A stretch of 64,000 bases of DNA. It comes from Mytilus californianus (lineage: Eukaryota). This document shows, one piece after another, positions 19,440 through 40,971 of this stretch. Position numbers and translations under genes: made by a program. Under the pieces are notes generated by a model. It ran no database searches, was not told where the DNA came from, and saw nothing but the letters and a program-made list of their open reading frames with translations. Within the stretch, counting starts at the first letter, position 1; each line of letters starts with the position of its first letter. Location of the stretch: positions 59,272,001 to 59,336,000 of the forward strand of contig NW_026262734.1 of the NCBI RefSeq assembly GCF_021869535.1, given 5' to 3'.

Positions 19440-19548
19440 GTTTGCTTATATTTTATTCTTTGTCACTTGAGAACAGTTTGAGAATACACTAAAAATAAAG
19501 AAAACAAACGCACTTTCATCTTCTCTGTCCTTTGCCCTCATATTTAAT
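19440..19548 (-). other. Terminal (3' UTR) exon of WAP gene A
   Basis: Acceptor TTTTACATTTTAG at 19549 and AATAAA near 19455. Clearly paralogous to 26661-26550. Confidence 0.55.
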
Positions 19549-20256
19549 CTAAAATGTAAAATATGTTTTACTGTTAATATACGTATACATTTTGAATGGT
19601 CATTAAGAAAATTAGAGGAAATACAATAAGCCAAAATGATGCAATTTCCAATGCTAGTGTACATACATACAGTTTTCCTCAATAGACGGGTAGTTTTACA
19701 ATTTATTAATCTCTAAATCGTCCTAAGTCAAATCAAAATATTATAAAGGAGATAATTCATGAATCAGCACATATTGGCCATATTAGACAACACTTTTTTA
19801 TAACTTATTTATCGTTGTGTATCGAGTGCCACGTTCCTTTTAGTACAAAAGAGGGATAAAAGATACCAGAAGGACATTTAAACTCATAAATCGAAACGCC
19901 ATGGCAAAAAAATGCAATACAGTCAGTAGTTTTGGTAAATCATAACATTATTTTCAAATAAACCAGATGAACAAAATTAACAGAACATGAAATAACAAAA
20001 CAGTAAGATTAAGTGCAACACCTTTAACATATTTAAGTATGGACAATCTTCAGTGATTTGTAATAATTTAAAAAAAAAATTTCCATTTGATGTTTCTGCT
20101 TTTAATTTTGAACTCTCAAAACGTTTTCAAAAAAGAAACAGGGCAAGTTGTTATTGTCTATGACATGGGCATTCATTCGGTGTAGGCAGTACTGTGTAAT
20201 GTATAACAATATCTTAATATCTTACCAATTAATTTTAAAATTGGTGATTGCAAGTT

Positions 20257-23200
20257 TTATCTACATGTCCGAATACCTTTTCTGCATTCTTTACCACAGC
20301 CAATTGAACAGCAAAGATATCCTCGACCACAGCTACGAGGTTGGCATGAAATACCACAGTGACTTAATCCATACGGCACAGGTGGACATTTCAGTCTGCA
20401 TGCTTTTAAATTAAAAAAAATATGTATACGCCATAATCATGATAATACAAAATAAGTGAATGATAAATAAAACAGACATGATTTATATAACTCAAAAGCA
20501 GTCGTTCGTATCTGACAATATTTTTGTTCATGCACTTGTTAAATGAAAAGGAAATAAATGTGTGTTCACATGTTTAAATAATTGAAAGTAACAAACAGAA
20601 CTTTGCGCGTTCAAAGAGTTTTTCTGGTTTTGATTTCATCAGAAACACAGAAATCCAAAAACTTGAAAGCCATGAATACATAGAAAAATTAGTAGCTGTA
20701 TGCTCAAACGTAACATAAAAAGAATACTGTAGCAGCCGTTTTGATCTATGTCAGCATTGTCTGAGAGAGTTGTAAGCTTGATTTTAAAATATTTTATTAA
20801 TTTAGCAACGGGATATAATGACTAAGAATCGTTGGGATTAAATAAAAGTAATTGGTGTAGGCGCGCACTCATTGTGGATGACCGAACGCCGTATTTCAGT
20901 TATTCATAACTTTGTCTTGTTGTCTCAACTACTTTTTTTCTACATATGATTTTATTCTCATGTCTTTATAAAAATGATATGTTGGGGCTTCGTCAACGAA
21001 ACAGCAACGTAACAACAAAACAATCTCCTAACAAAGCATACATTTAGAGTCAAAATACGATAGGTAAGCTTTAAATTTGATTGTGTAACGTATGTTTGTA
21101 TTTTATTTCAATATATTGAGAATAAATAAGTTCTCATTTACAACATTATAGGCGACCAAAGTATAACGGTGATTAAAATTTTATCAATCAATCGAAAACG
21201 ATACAAATCACATAATATCCAAAAGGAGCAAGACTTGTTGCGTCAAAAACTAAATTTGTTCTGAAACGGTACTGAGTTATACATTACGAAGTAATTTTCT
21301 ATCTTTCGGTTAATTTTTCGACTTTTTTCCGTGGTAAATTCTATACTGATCAGACAATTATTGCAGTCAATTGAATCTGTCCAGTTTATATTCAGACTGT
21401 TCAATAGTTGTTATTTACCTGTTATCGTCGACAACATGAAAGGCACTGAACTTACCGCACTGAATACATGTGTGTAGGTCTGAAAATGTATTGAAAGACT
21501 GAAGATATCTCAATGATTTATTGTTTAAACCTTTCATGCGATGTTAAGATCAAAATTACCATTTTCAGCCTAAGCACATCAACTTATGATGGTAAGTTTA
21601 CTTTGCTATGAATGCACCACCAACCGTTCGATTCACACCTAGGAAAAGTTTCACCTAGTCTGGTATTGATATATCTAAGTCACTTGTGAAATGTGACACG
21701 TACACCTAGTTCATAACGGTGACCGTAAAAATTCGATTGTGTCAATTTTAGTCGCTCTTTCTCATCACTCGGTTAGTGTAATGTTTGCGTGAGGAGCACA
21801 CATTACTCATAACGTAATGGTATTTGATTGATTTTGAACTATATTGTAAAAGTTTTCAGTATGCACAAGCACTATTGGAACTAACCGAAAATTATGAAAT
21901 TATTTCTGAGCGTTATTAGGTCTTTCTGTGAAGTTACTAGTTTCAAAGAAAGCTAAAAAAAAAAACTAAAAATGTTCCATTGTTTTCGGTTTTTATCTGA
22001 TTCAAAACTTAGATTGAGTTTTATATGTTTCGTCTGGATTAAAAAAAAATTCAATTAAAGATTTTCGTTGCTGAAATTATCGGTAAAAGAAATTTTTACT
22101 AATTAAATCTTTAAAAGACAATAAATCTTATTAGTTGAAAAACATTTTTAAGTCGTGTGCATGATGTTTTTTTTTACAATTTTGTGGCTTTTAAAAGAAA
22201 AATAAAAATACATCTCATGTCATTAATAATTAGAAAATATAGAGAAATGAAGGCAGTACTAGGCAATTTTTTTAACGCATACAAAGGAAAAAATATGGTA
22301 TGGTTTTAAAGTAATAAAGAATAGTTGAAATCGAACAATCTAACTTTGTTACAAAAAATGTATTATTATGTAGTAGAGAATTGATAAGAAGTAGTGGATT
22401 CGTAAACGATAATCAACGAGCGACTTTAGTCGCAAGTTGATTATCGTTTCCGAATCCACTACTTCTTATCAATTCTCTAGCTTAACCCATTTCTAGTAAA
22501 ACGACTGTCTGTTTTACGTTTTGACAATGAATCAACGATATTTCATAAAAATAGTTTCGTATTTTGTCTTTTTTATTCTATAATAGCTGGAAATGATTAT
22601 ATCCACACGGTTCGCATCTATATTTGGACATTTGACAAGTTAACATAAGTTTAAGATAACTTAAATGGGGTGTTAGCTCCCCTTTTTAACACCAGATTTT
22701 ATTTTTGTATAAACATATTTCATTTAATGTTTAATCATTACAAATTATTTAAATTGAATAGATTTTGGTATATTTAATTTATTCAAAAAGACATATATTA
22801 ATATACAGAATTTATTTATCTTGTTTTGAAAAGTTAAAAAAATTTAATTACCAAAATTTAGAACCTTCAAAATTTATATATATAATATTTAGCAACTTGA
22901 TTTGGTATGTTGAAGACTGAACACCGTTAAGCCGTTCTTAGTCAAATAAATATTATTAGCGTTGATGCCATACATCTGCCATTTCTTAATGCTCAAATTC
23001 GTGTTGCTTTCCTAAAGTATTAAAATTATGTGCTTACGATTTAAAATGAACTTATGTTTAAACTGTTTCCGTTTCATTTAGTTAAGATTATTTTAACGTT
23101 ATTACATTTGGCATATATCGTACACCGGTCAATACACTTGTTTTATCTGTGGTACGCATTCTGAATCCCCATCAAAATTGCTCTTGCTACGGATGTACAA

Positions 23201-24067
23201 TGAATAATTATGCTAATTTTATAAACTTACCAACAAGCTGTTCATAGCCGTGATCGTCTAGTCGTTGGTAACGAATGTCATAACGGTGATATTAACAGTG
23301 CAAAGTTCGAACCTTGTATCCGGAATGAAATTTTTTCATTGTATTTTTTTCTGGACCAAAATATTGTTTGAATCCTAGAACATGTAGAAGTATTATATAT
23401 TTCATTTTCATACAATGGCGATGATTTTGTTTCTGTTTTTACTGTCAAAGAAGTAGTTTTAACCCATTTCTTAAAAAAAAAAATAACACCCAAAATAAAA
23501 CAAATTCAATAAACATGAACACACCAAGATATATTTATTTCACTAGATTACAAAAGCGAATTATCAATGAGACAGAAATACAGTTAAATGACATGTATTG
23601 ACAAGTAAGCGCTTTAAGAGTACTATTCATATATTGATTGATGTCAGCCATCGTGGTCTAGTGATATCATGCATAGACTGAAGACTCTATTGATTATGAA
23701 GAAAATACGCGCGGGTTCGAATCCTACACATGCCACTCGTTTTTACAAGAGGATAAAAGATTGTAAGTTAAAGGTTTAAAGTTATAATAGAAGTTCTATT
23801 AAGTTAATACTGTGGTCAGTGGATTCTTAAAAAACAATCTACGGTAAGAACAATAGACTGACGTCAGAGAAATGGGTTAATTAATCATAGCAAACATTAT
23901 GATATAAATATATATGAAAAGCAAACTTTCTTGTAAGGTAATTGTCTGTTTGAAAAATAGTTTAGAACAGAAAATATGTACTTACCAATTCGTAAGCCAG
24001 ATACTTCAGTATTGACGAGGAATATCAGAAAAATACTGAAAAGAATCTTACAAGTAAACCTGAACAT
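20257..24067 (-). CDS. WAP gene A: secreted cationic single-WAP (four-disulfide core) peptide, 83 aa
   Basis: Exons 24067-23986 (signal peptide, GTAAGT donor), 21479-21456 (24 nt), 20402-20257 (TAA), all phase 1: MFRFTCKILFSIFLIFLVNTEVSG-LRIDLHTCIQCACRLKCPPVPYGLSHCGISCQPRSCGRGYLCCSIGCGKECRKGIRTCR. Has the 8-Cys WAP pattern. The AAAG acceptor is supported by the paralog at 40846. TATA-like run near 24115-24127. Confidence 0.8.
22374..22479. repeat. 106-bp near-perfect palindrome (foldback MITE) in a WAP gene A intron
   Basis: TAGAGAATTGATAAGAAGTAGTGGATTCGTAAACGATAATCAAC...GTTGATTATCGTTTCCGAATCCACTACTTCTTATCAATTCTCTA; arms of about 44 bp with one mismatch. Confidence 0.95.
23231..23374 (-). 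pseudogene. 144-nt phase 1-1 exon with an in-frame stop, inside WAP gene A intron 1
   Basis: Acceptor TGTTCTAG and donor GTAAGT. Reads GFKQYFGPEKNTMKKFHSGYKVRTLHC*YHRYDIRYQRLDDHGYEQLV. Confidence 0.45.
23646..23745 (+). mobile_element. tRNA-derived SINE head with Pol III A and B boxes
   Basis: A box TGGTCTAGTG at 23654-23663 and B box GGTTCGAATCC at 23714-23724. No complete cloverleaf. Confidence 0.7.
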
Positions 24068-25307
24068 TCTTTTATAGTTATGTTAACAAAAATACCAATA
24101 TTCTTATCTAATCGTTTATATATATATAACTTTAAAAACTAAATCCTATGAAATAGGGAAATTACTAGATAACATGTTTTCGCAGAAAATCCGCTTAACC
24201 TGCTAATATTCATTTATTTTATTTTTTTAATGAAATAAAAGATTTATAGGGCGTATGTCTAACCTACTGGCACCACCTGGAACACATCAATTACGTTTCT
24301 CGTTTTAATCCCCGATTAGAATATACTTTCCATTCGGAGCACGTACTTATCATATTGCATTCTGTTTTGCACTACCAATATTATATAATAATAACATTCA
24401 AACAGCTTAAAGATTTTCGGTCATTAAGCAGTATTTAACGTTATTGTGTACTTTGTAAGGAAGTTGAAACTAGCGACATCACTTTTAAATGTTTTCTCTA
24501 TTTACGTTGGTATCAAATGTATAATGCTTTTTTAATGGGCAATAAAACATAAAAATGCATTTACAATTGACGGTTGGACAATATTCAAACTAGATGATCT
24601 CTTGTTCAGAAGGGAAACAAACATTTAGCCAAACTCGGACGTCTCACTGTGTATTGGAAATAAATTAGTTTCTAAGACATTAGTTAAGTAATGTCTCTAT
24701 TGTATTTTATATAGTTAACATTTCCATCTACCGTATTTTGTTATGAATAGTGTGGTAAGATTTCTAACTCATGGGTGAAACTCTGGCCCCAGAAACTGGA
24801 TACCAGTATTAAACAGCATATGAGTTCTGCCCGTTTTTAAGTTAGGATTAGTGTTGCTCACGTAAACGAAAAAAACTACAAATCATGGTAGAAAACACTT
24901 AGTGAAACGAATGTATATCTACAAAAATCGTTTCATATCTCTAATATTTAAATCTCGTGACGTCGGATGCTGCAACTTGATATCAATATTCAACACGATT
25001 GGATATTTTGTATCATACAAGGAAGGCAACCGTACAGAAAAAAGTTAAGGTACCAAAGCAATTTCATTTAGTCATTCCTGTGCATAAGAACAAAAATCGT
25101 TTGAGCTCCCTAAATTTGACGAAATACCGATGGAGATTAAATACTATAAACAAATATTATCAAATGAATAGAATACATTTCACGGACTTACTTTGATTGC
25201 TATAATGACACATTCCTGATTACAGTTTATTTTCAAGCGGTTTTATTAACATTTGGTAAAATGTGTATTTCCCCCGACTTTTTTTTCAAGAGGTTAGGTC
25301 AAACATA

Positions 25308-25807: not shown

Positions 25808-26549
25808 TAGTTTAGGTTATTTGATTGCTGACTTTCTTTTCAAATCTGTCACTTTAGTGTATACTTGCGTTGTAATTAATGAATCTTGCTCAGTATGATT
25901 TCGTTTTATTATCCCAATACTTAAAGGAATGACAGAAAAGTCAACATGACAATGAAAGTATGAGTTAGAGGCACCAATCTTAGTATGAAATCATCACATG
26001 CATCAGTTTATTCCAAACGTAAATGGATGAAAGACATTGCTCACATATCATACCATAAAATAAGACTTTTGGAGATTTATTTAGTTGATTTTACTATTCC
26101 GGTAAATCATGCAAATACGCCATTTTACAAAATATGATTTTAAATTAAAATGTGAATCAATCATAGAACGTCACGTAAAAATAAAAAACTGTGAGCCTTG
26201 TATCTTTATTGAGTGTTTACAACCCTTAGGTCAGACAAACGTACTTACAATATTAAAGTGGATTTTTAAAAATAATTGTGAAGTTGTAACTTATATTTAG
26301 TTGTTAACACATGACGCACATGAATACCGCACATTAATAAGCACTTTTTCGTCTGAAAGGCTTCTTTTTTGTTGTTGTGCGTCTTATTTGTTTGTGTTTT
26401 TACATAATATTTCATTACATGTTGTTGTTTATATTTTTATGGATAAGCCTTTCACGTTTTCTGGTTTGGCATATGTTGTTTTATTCGGGTAAAATACATG
26501 ATTAAAACATGTAAAACGTATTCCTGGCTAGCCAACCAAACTTGAAGAT

Positions 26550-28178
26550 GATATTAGCACATATTTTATTCATTGTTATTGGAGAAAAGGATAAGAATAC
26601 ACTTAAATGAAAGCAAACAAAGGCACTTTCATCTTGTCTGTCCTTTGTTCTCAGTTTTAACCTAAAATATGACATATATTGTACTGTTTATTATTATACA
26701 TTATAAATGAAACACATGGTGATGTTTTCAACTATGAGGTTTTATAGTAAGCAAGGGAGAACTTGTAATCTTTTTATTACGCCATTATTTATCTTCATTT
26801 AATGACACCTTATTTTTAAATGACACCAGGTAAATGATAAACCTGACAGTTTACAACAAACTATCATTATACATATATATTTATGTTTAAATTTTAACAA
26901 ATCAAAAACATAATCCATCACTACTTTTATTGTTAATGACCGTACGATGTACATTGGTTATTTACGTTGCTGTCTCAATGTAATCCCCGATATAACTTTA
27001 TTTATATTTCTTTGTTATTATTTAATTTTTTATTACTTTGAACAATACAGTTCATCAGTATAGTATGCATAAATATAAAATTTACAAGTTGTATAGCGTT
27101 ACAAAACACATAAATAATAAACGTCAGAAATATTAGTAACATATTAAACAGTTTGTTAATTTCAGACTACATATTTTTTATATAAATATGTCTTAAATGT
27201 CGTTCCTGCACTCAAATGCATAGAGTAAGTACTTTCCAAAATTACAAAGATCCTTAGTGTTTTAAACAGAAGGTAATTATTAAAATCATGTAATGGGCTA
27301 TGTCAACTGAATACAAACGTATCAAGGACCTCACATAATCGAATAATAAGAAATTTTTTTGGGCTTAAGGTTATTTCTTATTTCGGAGAGGGTTCTAGTT
27401 TCGACGAAAGCACAAATAAATAAGACGTATTCTATCAGCACTTCTCTTGTTTTCGGTTAATACATATTACATCTTAATAAAACTTCGACTGAGCTTAGTA
27501 TGTATCATTTAGAAACAAATCATTTGAAGAATTCAATGCCACTGTTATAGATGCGAGAGGTTAAGCTAGCTACAAAAACAGGTTTAATTCACCAAATATT
27601 ACATAAGAAAGTGCCTGCACCAAGTCAGAATCATGACAGTTTGATTTCCTTGCATTCTGTTGATGTGTTTGGGCTTTTGATTTTGGCATTTTTAACGGAC
27701 TTTCCGTTTTAAATTTTCTTTGGAGTTCGGTATTTTGTTATCTTAATTTCTAAACATGTTCGTTGCTGAAATTAACGGGAAACTGCTTTTAATGAATGAC
27801 ATCATCTTTAACAGATACCAGTAGATGAAAAATTTCATTATTAATATATAGGTGGTATGCTTGATTTTTTTAAATTACAATTGAAATGGAGGCAGTCCTC
27901 GGCAATTATCTGAATGCATTGACAGGAAAAAATATGGTATGGTTGTTAAAGTATTAAGAAAATATTGAATACAGGACAATCAAACTTTGATAAAAAAAAA
28001 TCTTATGTGCACAAAATTATCTTAATATATATAAAAAGTAAAATTTCCTTGAGGTAAATTGTCTGTATTAAGAATAATTTGGAAAAGAAATAACGATATA
28101 CTTACCAAATCGGATACCAGATACTTCAGTATTGAAGATATCAGAAAAATACTCGATAGCATCTTACAAAAAAGACAT
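26550..28178 (-). pseudogene. WAP paralog B (pseudogene): broken signal exon, no WAP exon found
   Basis: Signal exon 28178-28106 aligns to gene A exon 1 but has 5-nt and 4-nt deletions (ATG TCT TTT TTG TAA). Intron 27745-27990 is homologous to 22065-22365, and 3' exon 26661-26550 to 19548-19440. Confidence 0.8.
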
Positions 28179-30124
28179 TCTGCTTTTGTTATGGTACTTG
28201 TACAACAAATGTAACAAACATAACAAGTTTCCTTTACGCTTGTTTTATATAATATACACAACTAAATCAGTCAAAACAGAAAAATTCCATAGAAAATATG
28301 TTTCCGGAAAATCCGGATTTGGTTAACCTGCTTGTATGACATTCATGTATCTTATTTTTTTCATGTACGTATAGATTAATCGGCTGTTGTCAACACTATG
28401 GAACAAACCAATAAAACAAGTTTTATTTGTTTTTCTTGTGTTTCCCCGAAGAAGAAAAAGACTTTACATTTAACACGTATGGTGAAGAAACTCTCCCTTT
28501 TTATTCATACAGTTCAATAGAACTTCCATCTTTTTCATTTTGTGGTTAAAAAAAATTCAAGAAAAGGTCAAAGGTCTAGGTCAAAACTGATCATTGACAT
28601 TTTGTCTAAAATATGTTCTAATTGTCATTACTAGACACTCCATGTAAATTACTAACTGTTTTCGAGTTATATATTCATTTGAAACGTGTTATTCTAATAT
28701 AATTAAGTAAATCAAATCCAAAGTTGTTTTGGAGAACGATGCGGCCAATTTCATTAGAAAACGCGGCGGAAAGGGAAGAAAAATAATAAAAAACCATAGT
28801 AAGAACTTAGGAAACACAACATGTCTCAAGACTTATTTACGCTATCATCAATTTAATCAAAAGAGATTTAATTCATTACCGAAAAATATAAAAAAAAAAA
28901 CAACACACTATAAATGTAACGCATCAAAGCGCTTTTCTGGATTTACCTTCTGCAGGAACGTTCAAAACCAAGTATCTAAATTTCAAAGCAAAGGATTATA
29001 AGAACGGAACAGTTGAAGGCTTTTATGACTAAAACAAAACTGCCCAATTTATACTTACCATAAATTCTACGCATGCAACATTCTATGTAAACCATCTGGA
29101 GCACATAATTATGTGAATTGAATATATTGCACTACCAATATTTCATGATGAAAATATCTTATCTGCTTAAATATCTTCGTTCATTGAGTAGTATATGTAT
29201 TCAACAGTGCAATTTACTTTTTTAATGACGTTTGAACTCATTGTGTTGTTTTTTTTTTTTTTTTTTTTTTTATTTTGTATTTACAATGTATCGAACGATT
29301 TTTCCTTTTGAAATCGGCGATAATAGAATTTCACCAGCCTTGTAGTTAACACTTCTGAAATGAATTATCATTGAAATGGGCATAACAAGTATTTTCTGTT
29401 TACAAAACTTTGAAATTTTTTTGGAAAACCATAAGGAATTTTGGGTCCTCAATATTTTTCCACTTTGTTTACTATGTTGGCCTATTTTAACGTTTTCGAT
29501 TCCAACTATACGGATGAGTCTTTCTGTAGATGAAACGTGCGTGTGGTGTACACAATTGAATTCCTTGTATCTGTAATGAGTTAATTGTGAAAACCAAATA
29601 TTCTAACATGCCCTATCACATCCATTACTTATACATGTTATAATGATCGTCTTGTTCTTGATGAGTAATCGATAAATTTGGAAAATTGGTATTTTTAAAT
29701 GATGTATGCTCTAATGAGTAGCAAGTATAAAGTTTTACTTTCCGTTTGTACGCTTGTTAGGATTATTGAATATAGGTCAACAATCCAAAAACCATTAAAA
29801 AATGTTGTTATTTGTAATTTTAAAAGTTTCTATTTATCAATATTATCATTTAAGACAGTTCTGTTATAACATTATCTTACCTCATGCATAGGTAATTGTA
29901 GATTGATGTCTAATCCGAATTGTATTCTAGTTCACAAGACTCAAACGAACATACATTATTCGTACAATAAAACTCAAAACATGTATAAGAAATGAGCTCT
30001 CCATGTAAGAGTAGCATACTTTATCACCCAATGTTTAATATGACTCAAAACAGTTTTGTTTTTCTTTCCAAGCACACTACGACTATTCTCAATCGTTACT
30101 AAAGTATATATCAAACAATCATAC

Positions 30125-30250
30125 AGATAAGACTCGATCACAGCCATCCATTAAAACAAACAAATTTTACACTATTCTACAAACCTACTTAACACAGACA
30201 ATGCTGTAGTAAGGATTACTTTCAGTATGCTACTCAGTATTACAGGTATT
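30125..30250 (-). pseudogene. Degenerate WAP exon remnant C
   Basis: ATTTGTTTGTTTTAATGGATGGCTGTGATCGAG resembles gene D AGTTGTTGTTTTAATGGCTGCGGTCATGA with small insertions. GCATACTGAAAGTAATCC resembles gene A GCAGACTGAAATGTCC. Confidence 0.45.
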
Positions 30251-31980
30251 CTAAAACAGTTGTAGTATAAGAAAGAATAATCATGAATTTGCCCTCTTAG
30301 ATTAGACATTGGGTTATTTTTAGACATGGTACATGTATTTCTAATCTGCTATGGTATTTGCTAGCAAATACCCCGGCACATGGAATTCCTGAATGACAAA
30401 TTCACCGGCAGAGAAAATTAAATCTGAATACATAGAAAATTGATGAAAATAGAATTTCTCTTACTCAATCAAAATACAGCAAAATACAGCATTATTACAT
30501 AAGGTGGAATCATCTTAAAACACACTAAATGTTGATACATTATACTGTTTCCCTGCAATTTTGTCTTATTATGACCGTTTGTAGTATGATATAATGTTAG
30601 ATAAGTAGACAATTTTGTTTAGTTGAAATGGCAGCAGGAGAAGTATATTAAGAACTTTTCTTCTGAAATACAATAATGCTACTTATCACTCGAAAAACAA
30701 AAAATCAAAGCAATTATTGAAAAGTATTCAGATTTCTTAACAATCGAAAATATTTGCCCTGACTAGGAACTAAATGTTTTGAACTAACTTCTATGGCAAA
30801 TATTGAAAAAAGTATATATTTTCAATAACAGATGAAAACCATTCTATGCTCCATTACAAAGATCACAACGAATTTTTAAACATGTTAAAGGTGTTGAAAA
30901 CTCAAAACATTTATTGTGTTGTTAACAAATGCAAAGAATTTGGTTTTTTTTTTTGTTTTTTGTTTATTTGTTTTTTGTTTTTGTTTTTGTTTTTGGTTAC
31001 TTTGGATTCTTTAAATGAACTAAATATGTACTCTAAAATCCTGCGATTTGTTAATTTGTTGCTTTGACCTTTAGGTGGTGCAAAAATAAATGTCGTATTT
31101 GTAAATATTTAAATTACGCATTAAAAGAGTGATTATTCTTAAATTTATCTCATGATTGGAAAATTTATTGACCTATGGTAATAGGAAAATGAATAATGAA
31201 CCCCCAGGTAATTTTATTAAAGTGTTCGACGTGTAATAAACAAGTACACTTGTCGTTACACCACTGTTGCAGGTTTAGGAGGTTGCAGCCAACGAACTTG
31301 TTAAACCCCGCTACATTCTGTGTGTGCCTATCCCAAGTCAGAAACCTGTTGTTCGGGGGTTGTCATTTGTTGCTGTGTTTTAATTTGTAAAATGTCAAAA
31401 ATAGGGAAACAGCAGTCAACATTGTGCTATAATCTTAATCACTCTATAAAAAAAAATATGTCAACGACGATGCCGCAAAGTAATGAATTATATTTCGTCA
31501 AATAAGATTTTTTGAAGACACTGGGTTAGACAGTAGTCTGTTACTCTGTTTGTATAGAATTTTATTTATGCCCATACACATAGAGTTTTTTTTTATATTG
31601 ACACCAGTAAAATGACGCAATGTTTAGGCTATCAATTTTATTAAAAAACAAAACGTATCAATTTTCTTCCACAAAGATTGGTTCATGTTGTTTTCATCTT
31701 AAAATCTTGAAAGCTTTGATAATTAAAACAGTAATTTACTGAACTGAGGTCTTCATGACATTTTCGTAGCGAGATATCAAACAAATACAATGTACTTCCT
31801 TATATATGGCGGTTTGCTGTCCACCCTGTGTTTGCAACTATGACCTACAAAATATATTATATGTACCGATAAAAATAAATAACTAAACATTATCGAACTT
31901 TAATATACTAAAACGTGCTATATAAAAGATAATTATGAAAAAAAATATTTTAGTAGTATTTTTCAAAGGATATAAATAAA

Positions 31981-32530
31981 AAAGTATTTGATTCTACCTG
32001 ATTTCAAAGTAATTGATTTTACATAATGTCAAAGTAATTGATTTTTGCATGATGTCAAAGTAATTGATTTTACATGATGTCAAAGTAATTGATTTAAATA
32101 ATGTGAGAGTAATTGATTTTATATGACGTGAAAGTATTTGATTTAACATGATGTCAAAGTAATTGATTTTACATGATCTCAAAGTAATTGATTTAACATG
32201 ATGGAACATTAATTGATTTTACATGATCTCAAAGTAATTGATTTTTCATGATCTCAAAGTATTTGATTTTACATGATGTCAAAGTAATTGATTTTACATG
32301 ATCTCAAAGTAATTGATTTAACATGATGTAACATTAATTGATTTTACATGATCTTAAAGTAATTGATTGTTCATGATCTCAAAGTAATTGATTTAACATG
32401 ATGTAAAATTAATTGATTTTACATGATCTCAAAGTAATTGATTTAACATGATGTAACATTAATTGATTTTACATGACGTGAAAGTATTTCATTCAACATG
32501 ATGTCAAAGTATTTGATTTAACATGATGTT
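31981..32530. repeat. 25-bp minisatellite, about 22 copies
   Basis: Consensus AAAGTAATTGATTTTACATGATGTC, head-to-tail with no spacers; includes a 24-bp variant. Confidence 0.95.
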
Positions 32531-32769
32531 ATTTTACGCCAGATTGAATATGTGACTGTGTCATTTAATACTAAGTAGCATACGAGTCACATGATAAATA
32601 ATTACTGTTATATGAGAATTTGCAATTATTACTATAGTAGTCTTAAAATTGAATGACCAAAAAAAAAAGTATGTTTATATCAAACATCACATTACAAAAT
32701 TTTGAAAATTATTTGTAGAACAATTCATCAGTTATTGCAGAGAAACGACAACAAAGTTCCCTTTTCCTA

Positions 32770-32935
32770 TCAGTCAAGAACTATAACTCTTAAATGGCCT
32801 ATGAAAAAAATCGTCAGTATCCAATTTGACCTCCACTGTGTCAGTATCATCATCAGCAACAACATATTCAAGTTTAAAAAAAACTGTTCATCAGGGAGCG
32901 GATGGAAACAACTTCCAGTTAAATAAAGATCACGA
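32770..32935 (-). other. Candidate phase-2 exon downstream of WAP gene D
   Basis: Acceptor TTTCACTTTTGTCGATCAG at 32936. Open to TGA 32770 as written; with one extra T in the T8 run it reads RDLYLTGSCFHPLPDEQFFFKLEYVVADDDTDTVEVKLDTDDFFHRPFKSYSS. Confidence 0.3.
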
Positions 32936-34497
32936 CTGATCGACAAAAGTGAAACTCGCTAATTTCGAACTAAACCTCTATCAAGTTATTAATAACATTA
33001 TTTGTTCAAGATACCAGTTTTACAAAACAGGTATTGCATTTCAATACATATTTTTTTTTTGAATAAAAATTATCTATTTCAGCAATTAAACAATAGTTTA
33101 TGATTAAATATGATATTCTTGCAAATAAATGATAAAGTTGCAGTTATGTTTGATACTCTTTTATTTATTATGTATTAATCACAATTTTTTGGGTAGAGTG
33201 TAAACAACTTTGCCATTATACATACAACATGTACAAAGCATAATGATTCATTAAAAATCAACGTTTGTTTATAGTTTTTCATTACGCAAAATAATTTTAG
33301 AATGTACCATTGAAAAGACAATATAGGGGGCAATGTAGGTATATACAAATGCAACAAATGGTAAATTCGCCATTTTCGAACCTAAGCCATACTGTGTGAA
33401 TTTTTTCTAAAGCCTGCAACAATTTTTTTTGATTGGTTCGGTGGTTCAAACGTCCAACATGATGAAAATTCGACCACAAAATGATGTTTTTTTCAGAAGG
33501 TGGTACAGAGAATGAATGCAACTGTAGTCATGTAGATTCTGAAACGACGATTTGTGATACAAACTTAAAAAAAACACACACACAAAGACAAACCTGATGT
33601 AAAAATTCCATCAAATGCAAAAAAAAACAGCGGTCAAATTTTAAATAAAAAAACAATGGTCAAACATTAAAGAAAAACAATCAAAAGGCACAAAGACATT
33701 TTTTTCACAACTATTACTTTAAATATTTAAATGTATATGAACAATCGATTAAAGATAGTCAACTGACAAATACAAACGGCATCGATACCTAGTTAAACAG
33801 TCATAAAATAAAAACGAGTTTATTTCTGTTTATTACGGTCCTTCCTCGCAAGTTCCATCTTTCTGTTGGAATTAGTTCGATGTCGTGCATATGGAACAAG
33901 CTAAACCGTTGTAAGGCATTCATCTCTAATTTAATTTCCAGTATGTTGAAAATTGTAAAAAGAGTTAGGGCGATTCCAAAGGATATTTAACTCATCAATC
34001 GTTACTGACAACGTCATGTCAAATATGGAGAGTAACCAATTTACAAAATACTATATAAAAATTTTAAAGCTGAGCAACATGAACTACATCACAGATTGTG
34101 GGTTATCTCAGATACTTCGAATGCTTATACGGATTTTTTTCCACTAGTGCCAACCGTCATCATGCTCATGAAAAAAATATCGGTGAGGTGAATCAACGGT
34201 GATGTGAATCATAAGTATAAGAGTTATTAAGAACATAAACACATTCAAGACAATCAAACGTTATTTATTAATCAGCTTAAGAGATCAATAAATATGTAAA
34301 ACCATTGCTGAAGATACATAGTTCGTTCATTCAATTAAATAATTAACTGTAATATGTGTAAAACAGTATGTTTGTTGCAAGAATCACCAAATCGACGTTA
34401 ATTGACTTATTTTTTTCTTAATTATTGTATTAATATTTACATCAAGACAATTGTACATGTTTGTATTACAAATTGTAAAGTGAATCTTTAACATAAC

Positions 34498-35083
34498 TTA
34501 CCATATTTCAAAGCACGTTTTAACTTTCTTTTTACAATCATGACCGCAGCCATTAAAACAACAACTTTTTCCAGAGCCACAACCAGCGCTTGGACACTTT
34601 TTACCACATGGACCGATTCCAATACCAGGTGTTCTAGGACACACCATTACGCATCCTTTAAGAAAAACATAATTGGAAGCATCTGTTAAGTATACGTCAA
34701 TGAAAAAGTAATGCTTTACAGTACAAAATATAGGAGTGGAAATAGACTTTTCCAGTACAATAGGAATATTCCTCGAATGATCAAATTGACAGGGACAAAA
34801 ATATGCAATGAGTTCTTCCTACTGATAGTTTTTCAACACATGGTGTATATCTTATGGTCATCGCTTATGTTTTGTCGCAAAAGTTATATACTAGAAAAAT
34901 AAGGTTTTGTAACTGATGTAAAAAGTTATGGAAAAATATAAAATGTTTTTTTTTTCTTTAATTTTTTGGTAACATGCACACACGCACAAACCAAAACATA
35001 AACTTACGTCGACCGTTGACCTCTATGTTGACAAATGATAAAAGACAAAAGCTACACAAAATAAGTCCATTCAATTTCGACAT
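34498..35083 (-). CDS. WAP gene D: secreted cationic single-WAP peptide, 86 aa
   Basis: Exons 35083-35008 (signal, GTAAGT donor, phase 1) and 34682-34498: MSKLNGLILCSFCLLSFVNIEVNG-RHASNYVFLKGCVMVCPRTPGIGIGPCGKKCPSAGCGSGKSCCFNGCGHDCKKKVKTCFEIW. A GTAAGT donor overlaps the end (TG|GTAAGT at 34502/34501). AATAAA at ~33820. Confidence 0.9.
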
Positions 35084-35128
35084 GGTGTCGTTGCTTTTGT
35101 AATTGTTAATCTGACTGCTAACTGGTAG

Positions 35129-35136
35129 TTTATATA
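35129..35136 (-). promoter_or_regulatory. TATA box of WAP gene D
   Basis: TATATAAA 46 nt upstream of the ATG at 35083. Similar TATA boxes precede copies A, B and E. Confidence 0.55.
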
Positions 35137-37915
35137 ATACATGGACCAACAAATTACAAAACATAAAATCAGGGAAAGAATCCCCTCATCTCCGATGACG
35201 AACAAGTTTTTCCAAGAATAATAATATTCATAAATTTATATGTAAGCATCAATATAAATATCTAACCTGACATATTCGTACCAGCTGGTGTTATGACATG
35301 TGACCATTTTACTTTACAAACTTGGACCATTATATTAAACTATTAATTGTATGTGTTTTCCAACGATTTTCTCTTTAAACATGTTAAAAAAGCTAATACG
35401 TATCTTATATGAATCCGGACTTAAATAGAACAAGAGTGTCAACAATGTTATCATTTACAAGATCATTGATATCCGCCTAAATATAAAACTGTTATATATT
35501 ACCACATTTTCATACATGGTCAAAGCTCCTGGGATGATAACCGTGTTATATGTTCTTAGGTCATTGCCAAAATATATATTAACTGGCAGTATTATGCTAG
35601 AACAATTTGAGGAAGATGCACCTTTAAAAAAAACATGAATGCACTAAATTTCTAAATTTAAGAATGATTTAAGTATACACAACTTCAAGCATACATAAAT
35701 AATTAAACCTGAATTAAACAAAATCGATGTACCTCTTTTGATGTTATGGAGTATACGTATCGTTCATATAATGACTTATGTCTTGAAATACTAAGGTATT
35801 ACTACCTCAGACATAAATGGCCTAAATCGGATTCGGCGAAAACTTTTTTCCAAAATACTTTGGATTGGTCACCACAGTAAAGGTATAACTGGGAAATTGC
35901 GTCAATTTATATTTGCTTTAAGAAAACATAACATTATATCTGAAGACAAATTTTCTCAATCAGTATTAATTTTGTGTTCTATGATCGTCATATTTTTTCC
36001 TTCAAGGTTAATCTGAATACTTTGTTTAAAAACCATAACACCATCCCCTCCCCCGTCAGAAATAACTGGTCGTTCCCTTTTGTTGTTCGAAAATAAGGGA
36101 AGGGATATATACTAAACGGACATTCAAACTACAAAATGTAAGTCTCAATATTGTATCACGCAAATAAACTTGGTCGAACTAACATGCTAGAACCCAAAGG
36201 TAACACTCGATAAGTAAATAATATCATCCTAGTATCTGAAACTCTTAGATCTGTCCAATATGCGTTTATATATCAAAAGAGAGATGTGGAATGATTGCCA
36301 ATGAGACCAATATCAACCAGGGAGTTAAATATATTACGCCAATATAATATGATGTATAAAAAGGTACACGTAGATCACCCTTGTTGTAATACATTAACCA
36401 AAAATCGCTTTGCAATAAAAACAAAATTTACAACCAGCTAAAATGTCTACTTTTTCTTATGTTTGCGGGATGCAGAAAAGCCTTATGTTTCCTCGTATAG
36501 TCATGGGTGTGTTCCATACTCTTTGTTCTAAAGCCTTCCTCGTTAAGGAGTTACTTGCATTTTCTGATCGAACTTGAATTTGTATATTGATAGGAACTCT
36601 GATTATCTTCACATTGGATAATGACTTTAAAATTTATCGTGACAGTTAATGAAATAATTGTTTTTTTGTCATTTTTCCAAGATACAGTTCTTCTTTCTTT
36701 GGGCACATTGTAAACACTTTCTTCCCAAGCTTTATCTTTGAATTGAATAATAAAGGTCTGCTTTTATGACAACAACTTAAGATTCGTATCTGTCCTCATC
36801 CCCTGAATTTATCTTAAATAAATAAGAAAACATCGATATGTTTTTACCTTTAACATGTTTAACCAGCAATGATAATTATGATCATGTCGTCATATTACAA
36901 TTTTCTTTTAATTCTCCTTTGCTATATATTGGACCGACTATCTGTTGAGTCTTTATCCGTTCAATGCATTAAAAGCTAGACCATCGTTTTTTTTTGTTTT
37001 TTTTTTTTTTGTGTGTCCGTCTGTAACATGGTTAAATATGTCTAGATGGTTTTACAATAGATATTTTGGGACCCTTTATAGCTTGTTGTTCGGTGTGAGC
37101 TAAGGCTCCGTGTTGAAAACCGTACTTTTACTTATAGTGGTTTACTTTTACAAATTGTGACTTGGATGAAAAGGTTTTTCATGTGCACTCATCATACCAC
37201 ATCCTCTTTTATTTAGACTTATCCCTCTGTCAATCAACTCTAATTCAGTTTGTGTATTTACTGATTATTCGTGGGATCGAAAAAAGTGCTGTGCTTAGAC
37301 TGAAGGATACCCAATTTCTTCTTTTTTTTTTTCTCTTATGTATGTGTTCGGTTGATTCATCATGTTCTTACAATAAATTTATATATGATTTTTTAACTTC
37401 AAAAGAAAATTCGCAAACATTAAACATAGTTATATATCGATAAGATATACATTTGAAACCATAAAAATGTAGTACAGTAAGAATGAGTCTAATTAAATCG
37501 TAAAATTTGTAAACATTCAATGCGTTTTTCATCGGACCGATGTATACTTAAAACAGTTAAAAAAATTGTGTCCAACAACACGGTGACGGCATAACTTAAC
37601 TGTGATCTGAAATTCGTCGATTTCATTGAGGGAATGAAGGAGAACGCAAACAAAAGTTGTAAGTCAGATTACTTATTCAAAACCATGTCTATCGAACTAT
37701 AAAAATGCATATGAGACAACATTTTATATGAAACAAAACTAATTTAATTTGGGAAATTCATTACTATGTAACGGATCATTTGGTTTAATTATCATGTTTA
37801 TATCTTCTTTTTTACTTTGTCATTGATACATAATCTGATGACCTAATTACATAATGTGTGCCTAACAGAAACATATTCACACACCAAAAAAAATCACACG
37901 AGATCTTACACTTAC

Positions 37916-38015
37916 TTTATATTTGGTCACTGAAACTGAAGACAAATAGAATGCAAAAACTGTACAGGTACAGTATCAATTACATCAATGTTGCTACATT
38001 CTTGTCGTTTATATA
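37916..38015 (-). pseudogene. Degenerate signal-peptide exon E with TATA box
   Basis: TATATAAA at 38015-38008, then LILYLYSFCILFVFSFSDQI* (compare gene D LILCSFCLLSFVN) and a GTAAGT donor at 37915-37910. No usable ATG. Confidence 0.4.
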
Positions 38016-40681
38016 TTAGAAGTGAAACTGCGACTGTTAATTTATAATTTATGTTATTCATGTTTCCCATGTGAATATGTCAAGGAATATTAAAATCATA
38101 CGGTTAACACTTGTGGTTTACACTTGTCGTTAGAAAAAAAAAGGTAATGTAAACATGGTCAAAAGGTAGACGTTTTATTTTAGTACACTTTTTACCTTTG
38201 TTATCTTTACCTCTTGTAGTGACATGTTTTCAGTGTCTCCAACTTTTCTCTCACTATAATCCGCTTAACCCTCAAATCCCCAAATCTATAAATCGTAGAT
38301 GTTTTCCCAGGTTTATGTCCTATTTTTAAACCACTAGGATTATTCCTCAGGTTTATTTGTATGCCATCTAGAGTGAACAAATTCCTTCCCCGCAAGTGTC
38401 ATCGTTCATATATTCAATTAGTGCATTGAGAAAATCAACCAATGATATAAAACATAGCAGTTATATGTATATGGTTGTAAAACCATTATGTACCAAAACT
38501 TGCAAGCTCTTGAAATATTAGCATAATAAAAAGACAATAGTTTCGACTACAACCGCACAAGTTATTTTTTATAATTTAATATAAAAAAGAAGAATGTGGT
38601 ATGATTGCCAATGAGACAACTCTCCACAAGGGACCAAATGACACAGAATTTAACAACTATATGTCACCGTACGGCCTTCAACAAGGAGCAAAGCCCTTAC
38701 CGCACAGTCAGCTATAAAAGGCTCCGAAATGACAATGTAAAACAATTCAAACGAGAAAACTAACGGCCTAATTTATGTACAAAAATGAACGAAAAACAAA
38801 TATGTACCGCATAAACAAACGACAACTACTGAATTACAGGCACATACATACAGAATGTGGCGGGGTTAAACATGTTAAAACTTTTCATCCGAAGAAAGAT
38901 TGAAAACTAGTTTTCAAAAATGTTATCTTAGTATTATTCCTGCAATACATTTTTGCAATAATGTTGTGTTTTTCTTTAACTTTTGGATTTTCATCGCCTC
39001 GAAGGGGTCTTTTCGCTTGTTTGTCAAAATAAATGTAAAACCGCAAGTTACCTTGAGGAGCATGACATGATTTTTTGTATTTGTTTGTCATATATTTATA
39101 ATGCTGGGGGAAAAACAACCTATTATAAAACATTCATTGTTTTGAACAAGGTAAACAGATAATTTGGAATACATCTGTAAATAAAAAGAAAGTCTTAATA
39201 ATATAGTTGCCATGTTGTGAACGTGGTCCAGGTGAACGCCTTAATAAATACTTACAAATGCCATAAAAAGATGTAAGTTATAATTTTAAATGCGTCTACA
39301 TGTACATGTAAAAACAAATTTTGGGCATGTTTGCGTTGTGTGGTTTATTCGCAAGCTCATTTTTCACCTCCAAATGAATAATTTGTTTTATAAGTAATGC
39401 ATTTGGTATAAAAATGATATAAATTACAATTTTGAAATCATCTTTAACCTTTAAGATAATTTTGGGACATGTTTATGTTATGTGGTTTCTTCGGAAGTTA
39501 TTTTTTTTTCACCTTCAATTAATTAATTTGTTTTACAAGTAATAAATTTAGTTTAAAAAGCTTAAACATTACAATCATATGAAATCATGTGTAAACTTAT
39601 TACCGGAATTCTTTTCTGTGCGTGTCTGACATTTCTCTTCAACACAGAAGTGTCTGTTCTAGGTACGTATATGTTTTAAGCTACTCTTATCAAAATTAAA
39701 TTATGAAATGTCTTCATTAGATTAATTCTGCTAATAACAATTAATTTTACCACCAAATAGGAAAACCTGAATAACCGGTCCGCATTATACTTGCAATCGA
39801 TAACACATATTAACCATTTGTTCTTTTTAAAAATATCAATAATCGTGTTGATAAGATAGTGACAAACGCTCGTCATTTATTTTGAGGATGACATGTATAA
39901 CAAATACAATTGAGTACGTATAAAAAATGTAAATCGATTCACAAAGTAAAACAACTGCTGAATCTCAAACAAAATAATTAAACGAGTTTATTTTATTCTG
40001 TTACCTTTGAAAACTCAGCTCTTCACTGGACAGGCGGAGTTCATTTACGTTTTATTAATTTGCGTATTTAAATAATGTATTAATTTTATCATAAGTTTGT
40101 AATAACCTTTTACAGTTATAAAATAGGTCATACCGCTGAAAACGTTTCCGAATCAAGAGCATAATAATATATAGTTATAAGTTTGATATAAAACAACTAT
40201 TAAGTTATTCTTAATAAGATTGGTAGTATTTTAATTGCTAGGTTACAGTTCCACTTTTTTCTCTCGGATTCTGACTTTTCGATCATAGAAGAATCTTTAA
40301 CTATCTTAGGTATAACTAAGTGAAATAGCACTTTTAGAATTATTTTCGTTAGTAATTTTAGTTTTACCCTTTTATAAAATGTTGTTTGAAAGTCAGTTAG
40401 TTTATACCATAATTCACCAAGAAATACTTACTACAGATACTGACCTGACCAAGCTACGTGTTACTGTATCTCGAATGCCCATTTTTAGCTTCATATTATT
40501 GCCGGATGGGAGTGTTCATATTTTTTAAAGAATATTACTACGATCGTTGGATACAAAAAAATATTCAAAATATAAATATAAACACATTAGAAATTGATAT
40601 CTGATTGGTTATTTGAGAGGATGGTTATTTGGTTGTTACTGTGTTGTCTCGACGATGTAGACACTTAAAAAGTTGTTTTTC

Positions 40682-40773
40682 TTATATGTACGTTTGAATA
40701 AAATGATATACGCCATTGCCAGAGCCACTAAAACGTACACCTTTGAAGCACACCACTTTGTACGGCCTTTTCT
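40682..40773 (-). pseudogene. WAP-derived exon F that has lost most cysteines
   Basis: Phase-1 acceptor GATAACAG; reads xKRPYKVVCFKGVRFSGSGNGVYHFIQTYI*. AGTGGCTCTGGCAATGGC resembles gene D TGTGGCTCTGGA...AATGGC. The 14-mer AAACGAGTTTATTT (polyA signal on minus) is shared at 39980 and 33812. Confidence 0.45.
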
Positions 40774-40845
40774 CTGTTATCAATTCCATCCAGTCATTAT
40801 ATTTTAAAAATTTTCACAATTATATTTTTTGAAAATATTCTAAAG

Positions 40846-40971
40846 TATGAACATGTGATGAAGAACTGCATTTTTGCAACGCGGAATTAATAATTTGTTG
40901 CTGTTCTATTGGCTGTGGTAAAGAATTCCTAAAGGGAATTCGGTATTAAGTCACAGTTATCTACGTATGTG
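40846..40971 (+). pseudogene. Inverted WAP exon remnant G (paralog of gene A WAP exon)
   Basis: TGCTGTTCTATTGGCTGTGGTAAAGAATTC matches gene A at 28/30 nt. Same AAAG acceptor and GTAAGA donor, but in-frame TGA where gene A has TGC. Confidence 0.75.

What the first reader, a model, noticed from the sequence alone, without database searches (positions are those of the whole stretch)
19440..40971. Birth-and-death cluster of small secreted cationic WAP-domain peptide genes missed by the ORF track
Seen in sequence: two intact spliced genes (A, 83 aa; D, 86 aa), each with a signal peptide and an 8-Cys WAP core, plus remnants B, C, E, F and G over 21 kb. Both mature peptides have K+R minus D+E = +8. 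Both have C3-x4-C4 spacing without the usual acidic residues, and extra cysteines flanking the core (12 Cys in A, 10 in D). Established: single-WAP cationic peptides (crustin/SWD, elafin/SLPI-like) are antimicrobial or protease inhibitors, while molluscan perlwapins are shell-matrix proteins. Inference: a rapidly evolving effector family that I do not recall among the classic mussel AMP families (defensin, mytilin, myticin, mytimacin, myticalin, CRP-I). This is the best candidate for an undescribed system here.
Basis: partly seen in the sequence, partly recalled or inferred. Interest (0 to 1): 0.78.

Follow-up and report, generated by a model that had tools for sequence, protein, structure and literature searches.

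The report
Mussel foot-protein-19-like WAP peptide genes
This California-mussel locus holds two working genes and two dead copies for small, secreted, strongly positively charged ten-cysteine WAP-fold peptides; they are sisters of the already named byssus-gland "foot protein 19", so the family is real but not undescribed, and an antimicrobial role is untested.

Summary
The window is Mytilus californianus (GCA_021869535.1, 100% match).

- **Gene A** is 75 aa, not 83. It is identical to RefSeq XP_052073226.1 ("uncharacterized protein"), and M. edulis has an ortholog.
- **Gene D** is unannotated. A spliced contig from a probable RNA run joins exon 2 to an exon 2.66 kb downstream.
- **Mature peptides:** each has 10 Cys, made of 8 WAP-core Cys plus a flanking pair. 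Net charge is +9 for A and +8 for D.
- **WAP status:** Pfam WAP scores fall below threshold (15-17 bits against a cutoff of 20.8). However, a family-only profile retrieves true WAP proteins, and AlphaFold models match omwaprin and SLPI best.
- **Dead copies:** I confirm only two relics, B and G.
- **Closest named relative:** M. californianus "foot protein 19" (mfp-19). Its signal peptide matches A at 23 of 24 residues, and its mature domain is 43-52% identical to A and D. Mfp-19 is one of the Cys-rich transcripts reported from the byssal cuticle gland in 2017.

So this is a known though barely characterised family. A byssus or foot-gland role is more likely than a new AMP family, but the tissue of expression was not tested. 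Ortholog dN/dS is 0.15-0.31. The scan has noted other WAP-type gene clusters elsewhere in this genome, but not this family.

The parts
23986..24067 (-). Gene A exon 1 coding part: ATG, 24-residue signal peptide plus 3 residues, ends in phase 1, donor GT at 23985-23984
   Evidence: Sequence read. The join to exon 2 reproduces XP_052073226.1 (P0003) exactly. The CDS span of 3811 bp equals the RefSeq gene span in L004.
20403..23985 (-). Gene A intron 1 (3.58 kb). It contains a 106-bp palindrome at 22374-22479.
20257..20402 (-). Gene A exon 2: the whole mature 10-Cys WAP-like domain and the TAA stop
   Evidence: Pfam WAP E 0.0057, 17.3 bits. The M. edulis ortholog is 91% identical.
19115..19629 (-). 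Block downstream of A that is conserved in relic B (70%) and in M. edulis (82%). It may be 3' UTR or a regulatory element; this was not tested.
28110..28391 (-). Relic B: promoter-like region and a decayed signal exon. ATG at 28178, in-frame stop at codon 5, and a frame shift before the ...NTEVSG motif.
   Evidence: A B-like exon is also present in M. edulis at L005:6050-6112.
26265..26709 (-). Relic B: copy of the block that lies downstream of gene A. No WAP exon lies between it and B's exon 1.
35008..35083 (-). Gene D exon 1 coding part: ATG, 24-residue signal peptide, ends in phase 1, donor GT at 35007-35006. TATA-like box at 35131-35136.
   Evidence: Conserved with its donor in the related-species contig L001. 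The exon 1 to exon 2 join itself is predicted, not seen in reads.
34502..34655 (-). Gene D exon 2: the whole mature 10-Cys WAP-like domain
   Evidence: Pfam WAP E 0.0064, 17.2 bits. 95% identical to L001 against about 75% for the flanks. Covered at 34500-34620 by contig X10, depth 23.
31845..34501 (-). Gene D intron 2 (2.66 kb, GT...AG).
31750..31844 (-). Gene D exon 3 (start). It completes the Trp codon, adds Ser and then TAG; the rest is 3' UTR. Only 31813-31844 was checked letter by letter, and the 3' end is unknown. Poly(A) signals lie at 31637-31642 and 31561-31566.
   Evidence: The 93 loose letters of contig X10 match 31813-31842 exactly. Acceptor AG at 31846-31845. Poly(A) signals.
39587..39662 (+). 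Relic G exon 1: intact signal-peptide exon in inverted orientation, phase 1, GT donor
40898..40943 (+). Relic G exon 2 fragment: only the CC...GCG...C end of the domain. It is 87% identical to A, has a core Cys replaced by Phe and an early stop, and lacks the N-terminal two thirds.

Best explanation
The locus is a small tandem array of the Mytilus-specific 'foot protein 19-like' gene family. It lies on the opposite strand inside a GIMAP gene model.

Gene layout: exon 1 carries the signal peptide. After a phase-1 intron, exon 2 carries the whole mature domain. In D, a third exon adds one residue and the 3' UTR.

Products: A (51 mature residues) and D (54) are compact secreted knots with the WAP four-disulfide-core fold. 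An extra Cys pair flanks the core and probably ties the N- and C-terminal strands together as a fifth disulfide.

Shown: the genes, one splice of D, purifying selection, WAP homology and fold, and kinship to mfp-19.

Inferred: by kinship to mfp-19, a highly expressed transcript of the byssal cuticle (accessory) gland, A and D are most likely secreted by foot glands into or onto the byssus. There they would act as protease-resistant, Cys-rich, cationic matrix or protective components. Their high positive charge (mfp-19 itself is about neutral) suggests binding to anionic partners or to microbial surfaces. The short Cys2-Cys3 segment argues against elafin-type protease inhibition.
For: Identity of the genes:
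- A equals XP_052073226.1 and has an M. edulis ortholog.
- For D, a spliced contig gives a GT-AG joint, with the loose end found at 31813-31842.
- D exon 2 is 95% conserved against 75% for its flanks.
- dN/dS is 0.15 for A and 0.31 for D exon 2.

WAP homology and fold:
- Pfam WAP matches nearly its full length, but below cutoff.
- A profile built from family members only finds 90 proteins at E<=1e-3. Those I checked pass Pfam WAP.
- AF2 models have pLDDT 80 and 78.
- The best PDB matches are omwaprin (Z 5.9, rmsd 1.6 A over 43 residues), SLPI, nawaprin, elafin and anosmin-1.

Kinship to mfp-19:
- P0019 is 'Foot protein 19 [M. californianus]'.
- It is 59% identical to A, including 23 of 24 signal residues (E 3e-24). 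It is 55% identical to D exon 2 (E 4e-15).
- The 10-Cys pattern occurs only in this Mytilus set among the 96 proteins fetched.

Literature:
- mfp-16 to mfp-19 are Cys-rich putative cuticle-gland proteins (PMC7018715; PMC9999432).
- Foot-specific WAP-like genes are reported in other mussels (PMC5549309; PMC7971044).
Against: - No tissue information was obtained for A or D. The one informative run (X10) is coded and only guessed to be RNA.
- The raw RNA-seq run X11 gave no reads on D, with about 6% of the run read.
- The mature domains are only 43-52% identical to mfp-19 and differ sharply in charge: +9 and +8 against -1.
- WAP-like genes in mussels are also mantle-specific, or immune-regulated in Hyriopsis.
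- The neighbourhood is a GIMAP (immune GTPase) region.
- Even mfp-19 is placed in the cuticle by transcript evidence only, according to the papers I could read.
Confidence: 0.5

Rival explanations
1. Host-defence peptides. A and D are a cationic, waprin- or crustin-like antimicrobial branch of the family. They would be made by hemocytes or mucosal epithelia, or co-secreted with the byssus, and would kill bacteria by membrane disruption.
For: - Net charge is +9 and +8 on a 51-54 residue disulfide knot.
- The best structural match is omwaprin, a cationic WAP peptide with membrane-disrupting antibacterial activity (PMC6266942).
- A WAP gene is used as a Toll-regulated immune effector in the freshwater mussel Hyriopsis (PMC5845394).
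- The locus lies among GIMAP genes.
- A conserved signal peptide with a divergent mature peptide is typical of AMP families.
Against: - The only named relative is a foot-gland transcript, not an immune one.
- Cationicity is not a family trait: mfp-19 is -1 and M. galloprovincialis P0094 is +3.
- Ortholog dN/dS is low.
- No expression or activity data exist.
Confidence: 0.25
2. Serine-protease inhibitors of the elafin/SLPI kind that protect byssus or extracellular matrix from microbial or endogenous proteases.
For: - The fold is WAP, and the SLPI half-domain is among the best structural matches.
- Foot-specific WAP-like proteins and many protease inhibitors in mussel foot have been interpreted this way (PMC5549309; PMC7971044).
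Against: - The segment between Cys2 and Cys3 carries the P1 residue in elafin and SLPI, where it is 8 residues long (from my own knowledge of those sequences).
- Here that segment is only 3 residues, as in omwaprin.
- The profile aligns to SLPI only from Cys3 onward.
Confidence: 0.12
3. Shell-matrix proteins of the perlwapin kind, made in the mantle.
For: WAP annotations are enriched in mussel mantle-rim transcriptomes and in shell proteomes (PMC5549309; titles).
Against: - These are single-domain, cationic peptides, and their closest relative comes from foot gland.
- Perlwapin has three WAP repeats (from memory).
- No mantle evidence was obtained here.
Confidence: 0.08
4. A and/or D are decaying or non-functional copies, and the apparent genes are annotation noise.
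For: - Two of the four copies in the window are dead.
- D is absent from RefSeq proteins.
- X11 gave no reads on D.
Against: - Both have intact frames, canonical splice sites and conserved intron phase.
- Orthologs are under purifying selection.
- A spliced contig at depth 23 covers D.
- A is modelled identically in two species.
Confidence: 0.05

Closest known systems
Mytilus californianus foot protein 19 (mfp-19 / Mcfp-19p; AST36138.1, UniProt A0A223HCK5), one of the Cys-rich mfp-16 to mfp-19 set of the byssal cuticle (accessory) gland (DeMartini et al. 2017, as cited in PMC7018715)
   Same: - Same species, and the same size (74 aa against 75 and 78).
- Its signal peptide matches A at 23 of 24 residues.
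- Same 10-Cys pattern, C-x3-C...CC...C-x6-C.
- 43% mature-domain identity to A and 52% to D.
   Different: - The mature peptide of mfp-19 is about neutral (-1), while A is +9 and D is +8.
- D has a different signal peptide.
- mfp-19's own gene is not in this window.
- Gland expression of A and D was not tested.
Snake-venom waprins (omwaprin 3NGG, nawaprin 1UDK)
   Same: - Single WAP domain of about 50 residues, cationic.
- Short 3-residue Cys2-Cys3 segment.
- Best structural match: Z 5.9, rmsd 1.6 A over 43 residues, 37% identity.
- Profile E 7.7e-6 for nawaprin and 8e-4 for omwaprin.
   Different: - Waprins have 8 Cys; this family has 10.
- They are vertebrate venom-gland products and are unrelated in gene context.
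- Antibacterial activity is shown for omwaprin only.
Elafin / SLPI (trappin and antileukoproteinase WAP inhibitors)
   Same: WAP four-disulfide-core fold, secreted, and often cationic.
   Different: The 8-residue inhibitory loop between Cys2 and Cys3 is replaced by 3 residues. HMM alignment to SLPI covers only the C-terminal half.
Crustacean crustins and single-WAP-domain (SWD) proteins; Hyriopsis cumingii HcWAP
   Same: Small, secreted, cationic invertebrate WAP proteins treated as immune effectors (PMC10608444; PMC5845394).
   Different: - Crustins are described with a 12-Cys signature and additional N-terminal regions.
- Here there are 10 Cys, with one extra Cys on each side of the core.
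- No sequence-level link closer than the generic WAP domain was seen.
Foot-specific WAP-like genes of other mussels (Mytilisepta virgata, Perna viridis)
   Same: WAP-type secreted proteins highly or specifically expressed in byssus-forming foot (PMC5549309; PMC7971044).
   Different: Their sequences were not compared here. The 10-Cys variant was found only in Mytilus.

Membership tests
WAP four-disulfide core domain (Pfam PF00095) | Eight Cys in the pattern C1...C2...C3...C4-x5-C5C6-x3-C7-x3-C8 with the central CC doublet | tested here: met
   A, D, their orthologs and mfp-19 all keep the eight columns when aligned with Pfam-passing WAP domains.
WAP four-disulfide core domain (Pfam PF00095) | Score at or above Pfam's gathering cutoff (20.8 bits) | tested here: inconclusive
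   Scores are 15.0-17.3 bits with E 0.006-0.03, aligned over model positions 4-40 of 41. This is below the cutoff, but WAP is the only family hit.
WAP four-disulfide core domain (Pfam PF00095) | Reciprocal homology: a profile of the family alone retrieves accepted WAP proteins | tested here: met
   Profile A1 (A, D and their orthologs only) gives 90 hits at E<=1e-3. Six non-family hits that I checked pass Pfam WAP at 23-65 bits.
WAP four-disulfide core domain (Pfam PF00095) | WAP fold | tested here: met
   AF2 models of A (pLDDT 80) and D exon 2 (pLDDT 78) have only WAP structures as top hits: omwaprin, SLPI, nawaprin, elafin and anosmin-1. TM scores are 0.56-0.69 and Z is 5.9. Caveat: the input alignments included true WAP sequences.
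Mytilus foot protein 19-like Cys-rich family | Significant sequence similarity to AST36138.1 over the mature domain | tested here: met
   A has E 3e-24 and D exon 2 has E 4e-15.
Mytilus foot protein 19-like Cys-rich family | Ten-Cys pattern: WAP core plus a Cys four residues before C1 and a Cys 6 residues after C8 | tested here: met
   The regular expression matches only A, its ortholog, mfp-19 and M. galloprovincialis P0094/P0022 among the 96 proteins fetched. D exon 2 shows the same pattern.
Mytilus foot protein 19-like Cys-rich family | Expression in the foot accessory (cuticle) gland, or presence in byssus | not tested
   Run X10 is coded, so its tissue is unknown.
Elafin/SLPI-type WAP protease inhibitors | Exposed inhibitory loop of about 8 residues with the P1 residue between Cys2 and Cys3 | tested here: not met
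   The segment is 3 residues in A, D and mfp-19. The profile aligns to SLPI only from Cys3 on. Loop length in elafin and SLPI is from my own knowledge.
Crustins (type I) | Twelve conserved Cys: a 4-Cys region followed by the 8-Cys WAP domain; crustacean origin | tested here: not met
   There are ten Cys, with the extra two split between the N and C sides of the core. The definition is as given in PMC10608444.
Perlwapin-type shell matrix proteins | Several tandem WAP repeats; isolated from nacre | tested here: not met
   There is a single domain per gene. The perlwapin architecture is from memory. Shell presence cannot be tested here.
Waprins (functional analogy only) | Antibacterial, membrane-disrupting activity of the folded peptide | not testable with these tools
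   This needs peptide synthesis or expression and MIC assays. The omwaprin activity is as summarised in PMC6266942.

The most novel reading that the evidence does not exclude
A and D are a strongly cationic, waprin-like antimicrobial offshoot of the byssal mfp-19 family. They could be a new mussel AMP family. Alternatively, they could be an antimicrobial component that mussels build into the byssus coating to keep bacteria and their proteases off a long-lived extracellular fibre.
Probability: 0.25. Interest if true: 0.6.

Novelty: new member of a known kind. Interest (0 to 1): 0.35.

Why it matters
The finding ties the poorly characterised Cys-rich byssal proteins (mfp-19 type) to the WAP fold. 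In the materials papers I could read they are discussed only as thiol-rich or cysteine-rich proteins, with no mention of a WAP domain.

If their ten Cys are locked in five disulfides, as the WAP fold implies, the proposed role as free-thiol reductants in the cuticle would need re-examination.

It also adds an unannotated gene (D) and a corrected structure. It shows that the family sits in a tandem array that is rearranged between Mytilus species. And it singles out two highly cationic paralogs as cheap candidates for antibacterial and anti-protease assays.

It is not a new kind of system.

Tried and rejected
That block is conserved in the related species and is followed by AATAAA at 34264-34269. 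However, the only spliced contig skips it. It may be an alternative 3' end; reading through unspliced would give a stop right after exon 2.
Replaced by the 75-aa RefSeq-identical model.
- **Remnants C, E and F.** Not found by tblastn at E<=10, low-stringency blastn or motif scans.
- **Word-index protein searches.** These found only one cluster each. The search with mfp-19 returned only itself, so they say little about family size.
- **RNA raw-read run X11.** It gave no reads on D, which the tool itself rates as no test.
- **DeMartini et al. 2017 (PMC5493799).** The paper is not held. The supplements of PMC7018715 hold no mfp-16 to mfp-19 sequences. I therefore could not check whether A or D equals mfp-16, -17 or -18. 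No protein within 90% identity of A carries such a name.
- **Homology between D's exon 3 and A's downstream region.** None was found, so whether A has a spliced 3' UTR stays open.
- **The search of earlier findings by sequence.** Blank.
- **The joined three-exon D model.** It was not sent to any search or fold tool. Exon 2 was used by reference, and only residue counts were taken across its pieces.

Full report
**Source of the window.** A locus fetched from the M. californianus assembly GCA_021869535.1 (JAKFGE010000008.1, about 59.28-59.31 Mb) matches window 34067-10257 at 100% over 23,811 bases. The window is therefore California mussel. GC content is about 30% throughout.

**What is in the sequence.** A six-frame scan for a WAP-like cysteine pattern finds exactly two stop-free segments, both on the minus strand, at 20284-20388 and 34534-34641.
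- Each has an AG acceptor in phase 1 just upstream.
- Each is preceded by a short exon encoding Met, a hydrophobic core and a small-x-small cleavage motif, ending in phase 1 at a GTAAG donor.
- The intron is 3.6 kb in A and 0.35 kb in D.
- tblastn, low-stringency blastn and motif scans find no further intact copy in the 64 kb.

**Gene A.** Joining 24067-23986 to 20402-20257 gives 75 residues. This is letter for letter RefSeq XP_052073226.1, "uncharacterized protein LOC127711265" (P0003).
- M. edulis has XP_071179598.1 with the same exon structure.
- Between the two species there are 10 synonymous and 6 non-synonymous changes, giving dN/dS 0.15, or 0.10 in the mature part.
The mature peptide has 51 residues, 10 Cys and a net charge of +9.

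**Gene D.** No annotated protein exists for D. The word search found only 49-residue ORF calls on genomic Logan contigs of a related Mytilus (P0001 and P0004, 92% identical).
- Against contig L001, exon 2 is 95% identical while the 2.2-kb region averages 75%.
- Exon 2 dN/dS is 0.31 on only 7 changes.
- Of four runs laid on 34000-35300, one gave a result. X10 is a set of Logan contigs that is only guessed to be RNA. It holds a 214-nt contig at depth 23.
- That contig matches 34500-34620 without a mismatch and then leaves the genome exactly at the predicted donor.
- The 30 loose letters the tool printed, those next to the joint (of 93 in all), match 31813-31842 exactly. Zero matches are expected by chance. 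They follow a polypyrimidine tract and an AG at 31846-31845.
- A GT-AG joint that skips 2.66 kb is best read as splicing. So D is transcribed, and exon 3 adds one residue and a stop. The protein is 78 aa, with a 54-residue mature peptide, 10 Cys and net charge +8.
It may be an alternative 3' end, since it is conserved and followed by AATAAA. Reading through unspliced would stop right after exon 2 anyway.
- The exon 1 to exon 2 join of D is predicted only.
- The raw RNA-seq run X11 gave no reads. The tool itself rates that as no test.
- I did not send the joined D model to any search or fold tool. Exon 2 was used by reference.

**Dead copies.** Two relics could be shown.
- Relic B (minus strand) keeps a promoter-like region and a signal exon 68% like A's. 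Indels put a stop at codon 5 and shift the frame.
- B also keeps a piece of intron (27883-27999) and the block found downstream of A (26265-26709, 70% identical). It has no WAP exon.
- A B-like signal exon also exists in M. edulis, so this relic is old.
- Relic G (plus strand) has an intact signal exon at 39587-39662. Of exon 2 it keeps only the last third, with a core Cys replaced and an early stop.
- I could not find separate remnants C, E and F.

**Differences between species.**
- M. edulis carries an extra WAP fragment downstream of its A ortholog.
- In M. galloprovincialis an A-type exon 1 and intron are followed by a different WAP exon (P0094, 82 aa), and an A-like exon 2 lies upstream.
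- The array therefore does gain, lose and reshuffle copies.

**Is it a WAP domain?**
- Pfam WAP is the only family hit and aligns over positions 4-40 of 41. It scores 15-17 bits against a cutoff of 20.8.
- A profile built only from A, D and their orthologs was run against 1.84 billion representatives. It returned 90 proteins at E<=1e-3.
- Six of the non-family hits were checked, and all pass Pfam WAP at 23-65 bits.
- A wider profile hits anosmin-1 (E 1.8e-6), nawaprin (7.7e-6) and omwaprin (8e-4) in the PDB. That profile already contains true WAP sequences, so the test is partly circular.
- The AlphaFold model of A's mature domain (pLDDT 80) has omwaprin as best match. Foldseek gives probability 0.98 and TM 0.63-0.69. 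VIA-align gives Z 5.9 and rmsd 1.6 A over 43 of 46 residues.
- The next matches are the SLPI half-domain and elafin.
- The model of D exon 2 (pLDDT 78) gives the same list.
- I accept a divergent WAP domain.
- C3-x4-C4 spacing is shared with Pfam-passing WAPs and is not special to this family.
- What is special is the extra Cys pair, one four residues before C1 and one six residues after C8. Among the 96 proteins fetched it is seen only in this Mytilus set. The predicted terminal strands fit a fifth disulfide, but I did not verify it.

**The closest named relative changes the reading.** Hit P0019 is "Foot protein 19 [Mytilus californianus]" (AST36138.1, A0A223HCK5).
- It shares 23 of 24 signal residues with A and the same 10-Cys pattern.
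- Its mature domain is 43% identical to A and 52% to D. It looks like an A-type signal on a D-type domain.
- According to PMC7018715, transcriptomics of M. californianus foot glands (DeMartini et al. 2017) identified mfp-16 to mfp-19. They are described as a family of putative Cys-rich proteins of the cuticle gland, and are proposed to form the sulfur-rich cuticle matrix.
- A review calls them thiol-rich partners of DOPA proteins (PMC9999432).
- I could not read the 2017 paper itself.
- M. galloprovincialis P0094 is already called "WAP domain-containing protein" in UniRef.
- Foot-specific WAP-like genes are reported in Mytilisepta virgata and Perna viridis.

**How it most likely works.**
- Shown: two transcribable genes for secreted WAP-fold knots of the mfp-19 family.
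- Inferred, at about 50%: they are foot-gland products that end up in or on the byssus, as disulfide-rich, protease-resistant, cationic matrix or protective components.
- About 25%: they act as antimicrobial peptides. The points in favour are the charge, the omwaprin likeness (PMC6266942), HcWAP as an immune effector in another bivalve and the GIMAP neighbourhood.
- Canonical elafin-type inhibition is unlikely, because the Cys2-Cys3 segment has 3 residues instead of the long inhibitory loop.
- These roles are not mutually exclusive.

**Verdict.** The novelty amounts to a new, unannotated member (D) and a clearer fold assignment for a known, named but barely characterised family. Interest is moderate to low. 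The most useful consequence is the question whether mfp-19-type proteins can be free-thiol reductants if they fold as five-disulfide WAP knots.

Noticed in passing
window 16769-17293 (+): A 174-residue open exon matches Pfam AIG1/GIMAP (E 6e-17). In the public annotation, GIMAP gene models on the plus strand span the whole stretch that contains gene A, so A is nested antisense in a GIMAP intron. Alternatively, the GIMAP model is a chimera of tandem genes.
   Followed up: partly
window 31981-32529: A 25-bp unit satellite (22 copies, higher-order period 125 bp) lies inside intron 2 of gene D, about 140 bp upstream of the exon 3 acceptor.
   Followed up: no
window 58622-59778: A tandem array with a 158/318-bp period (7 copies, 80-86% alike). 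Weaker copies of the unit are at 16433-16588.
   Followed up: no
window 12398-12750, 12821-13105, 37064-37215, 38575-38837, 54637-54919: A dispersed repeat of about 250 bp (74-86% alike, both orientations). It is also present near the orthologous loci in M. edulis and M. galloprovincialis, so it is probably a SINE- or MITE-like element.
   Followed up: no
window 22374-22479: A 106-bp near-perfect palindrome (92%) inside intron 1 of gene A.
   Followed up: no
window 20200-20216 and 40973-40989: Downstream of the stop in both A and relic G, a GGTAAGATATT motif is conserved. It corresponds in position to D's exon 2 donor. The ancestral gene therefore probably had the third exon, and A acquired its stop 45 nt before the old donor.
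   Followed up: partly
L006 (M. galloprovincialis UYJE01006869.1) 10001-16884: The public 82-aa model splices an A-type signal exon across 6.7 kb to a WAP exon, although a second signal exon lies only 1.6 kb upstream of that WAP exon (15063-15143). This is either exon sharing between tandem copies or a mis-model.
   Followed up: no
window 49538-49955: A 27-bp tandem repeat (15.5 copies) in the most GC-rich, most GC-skewed part of the window (48-50 kb).
   Followed up: no
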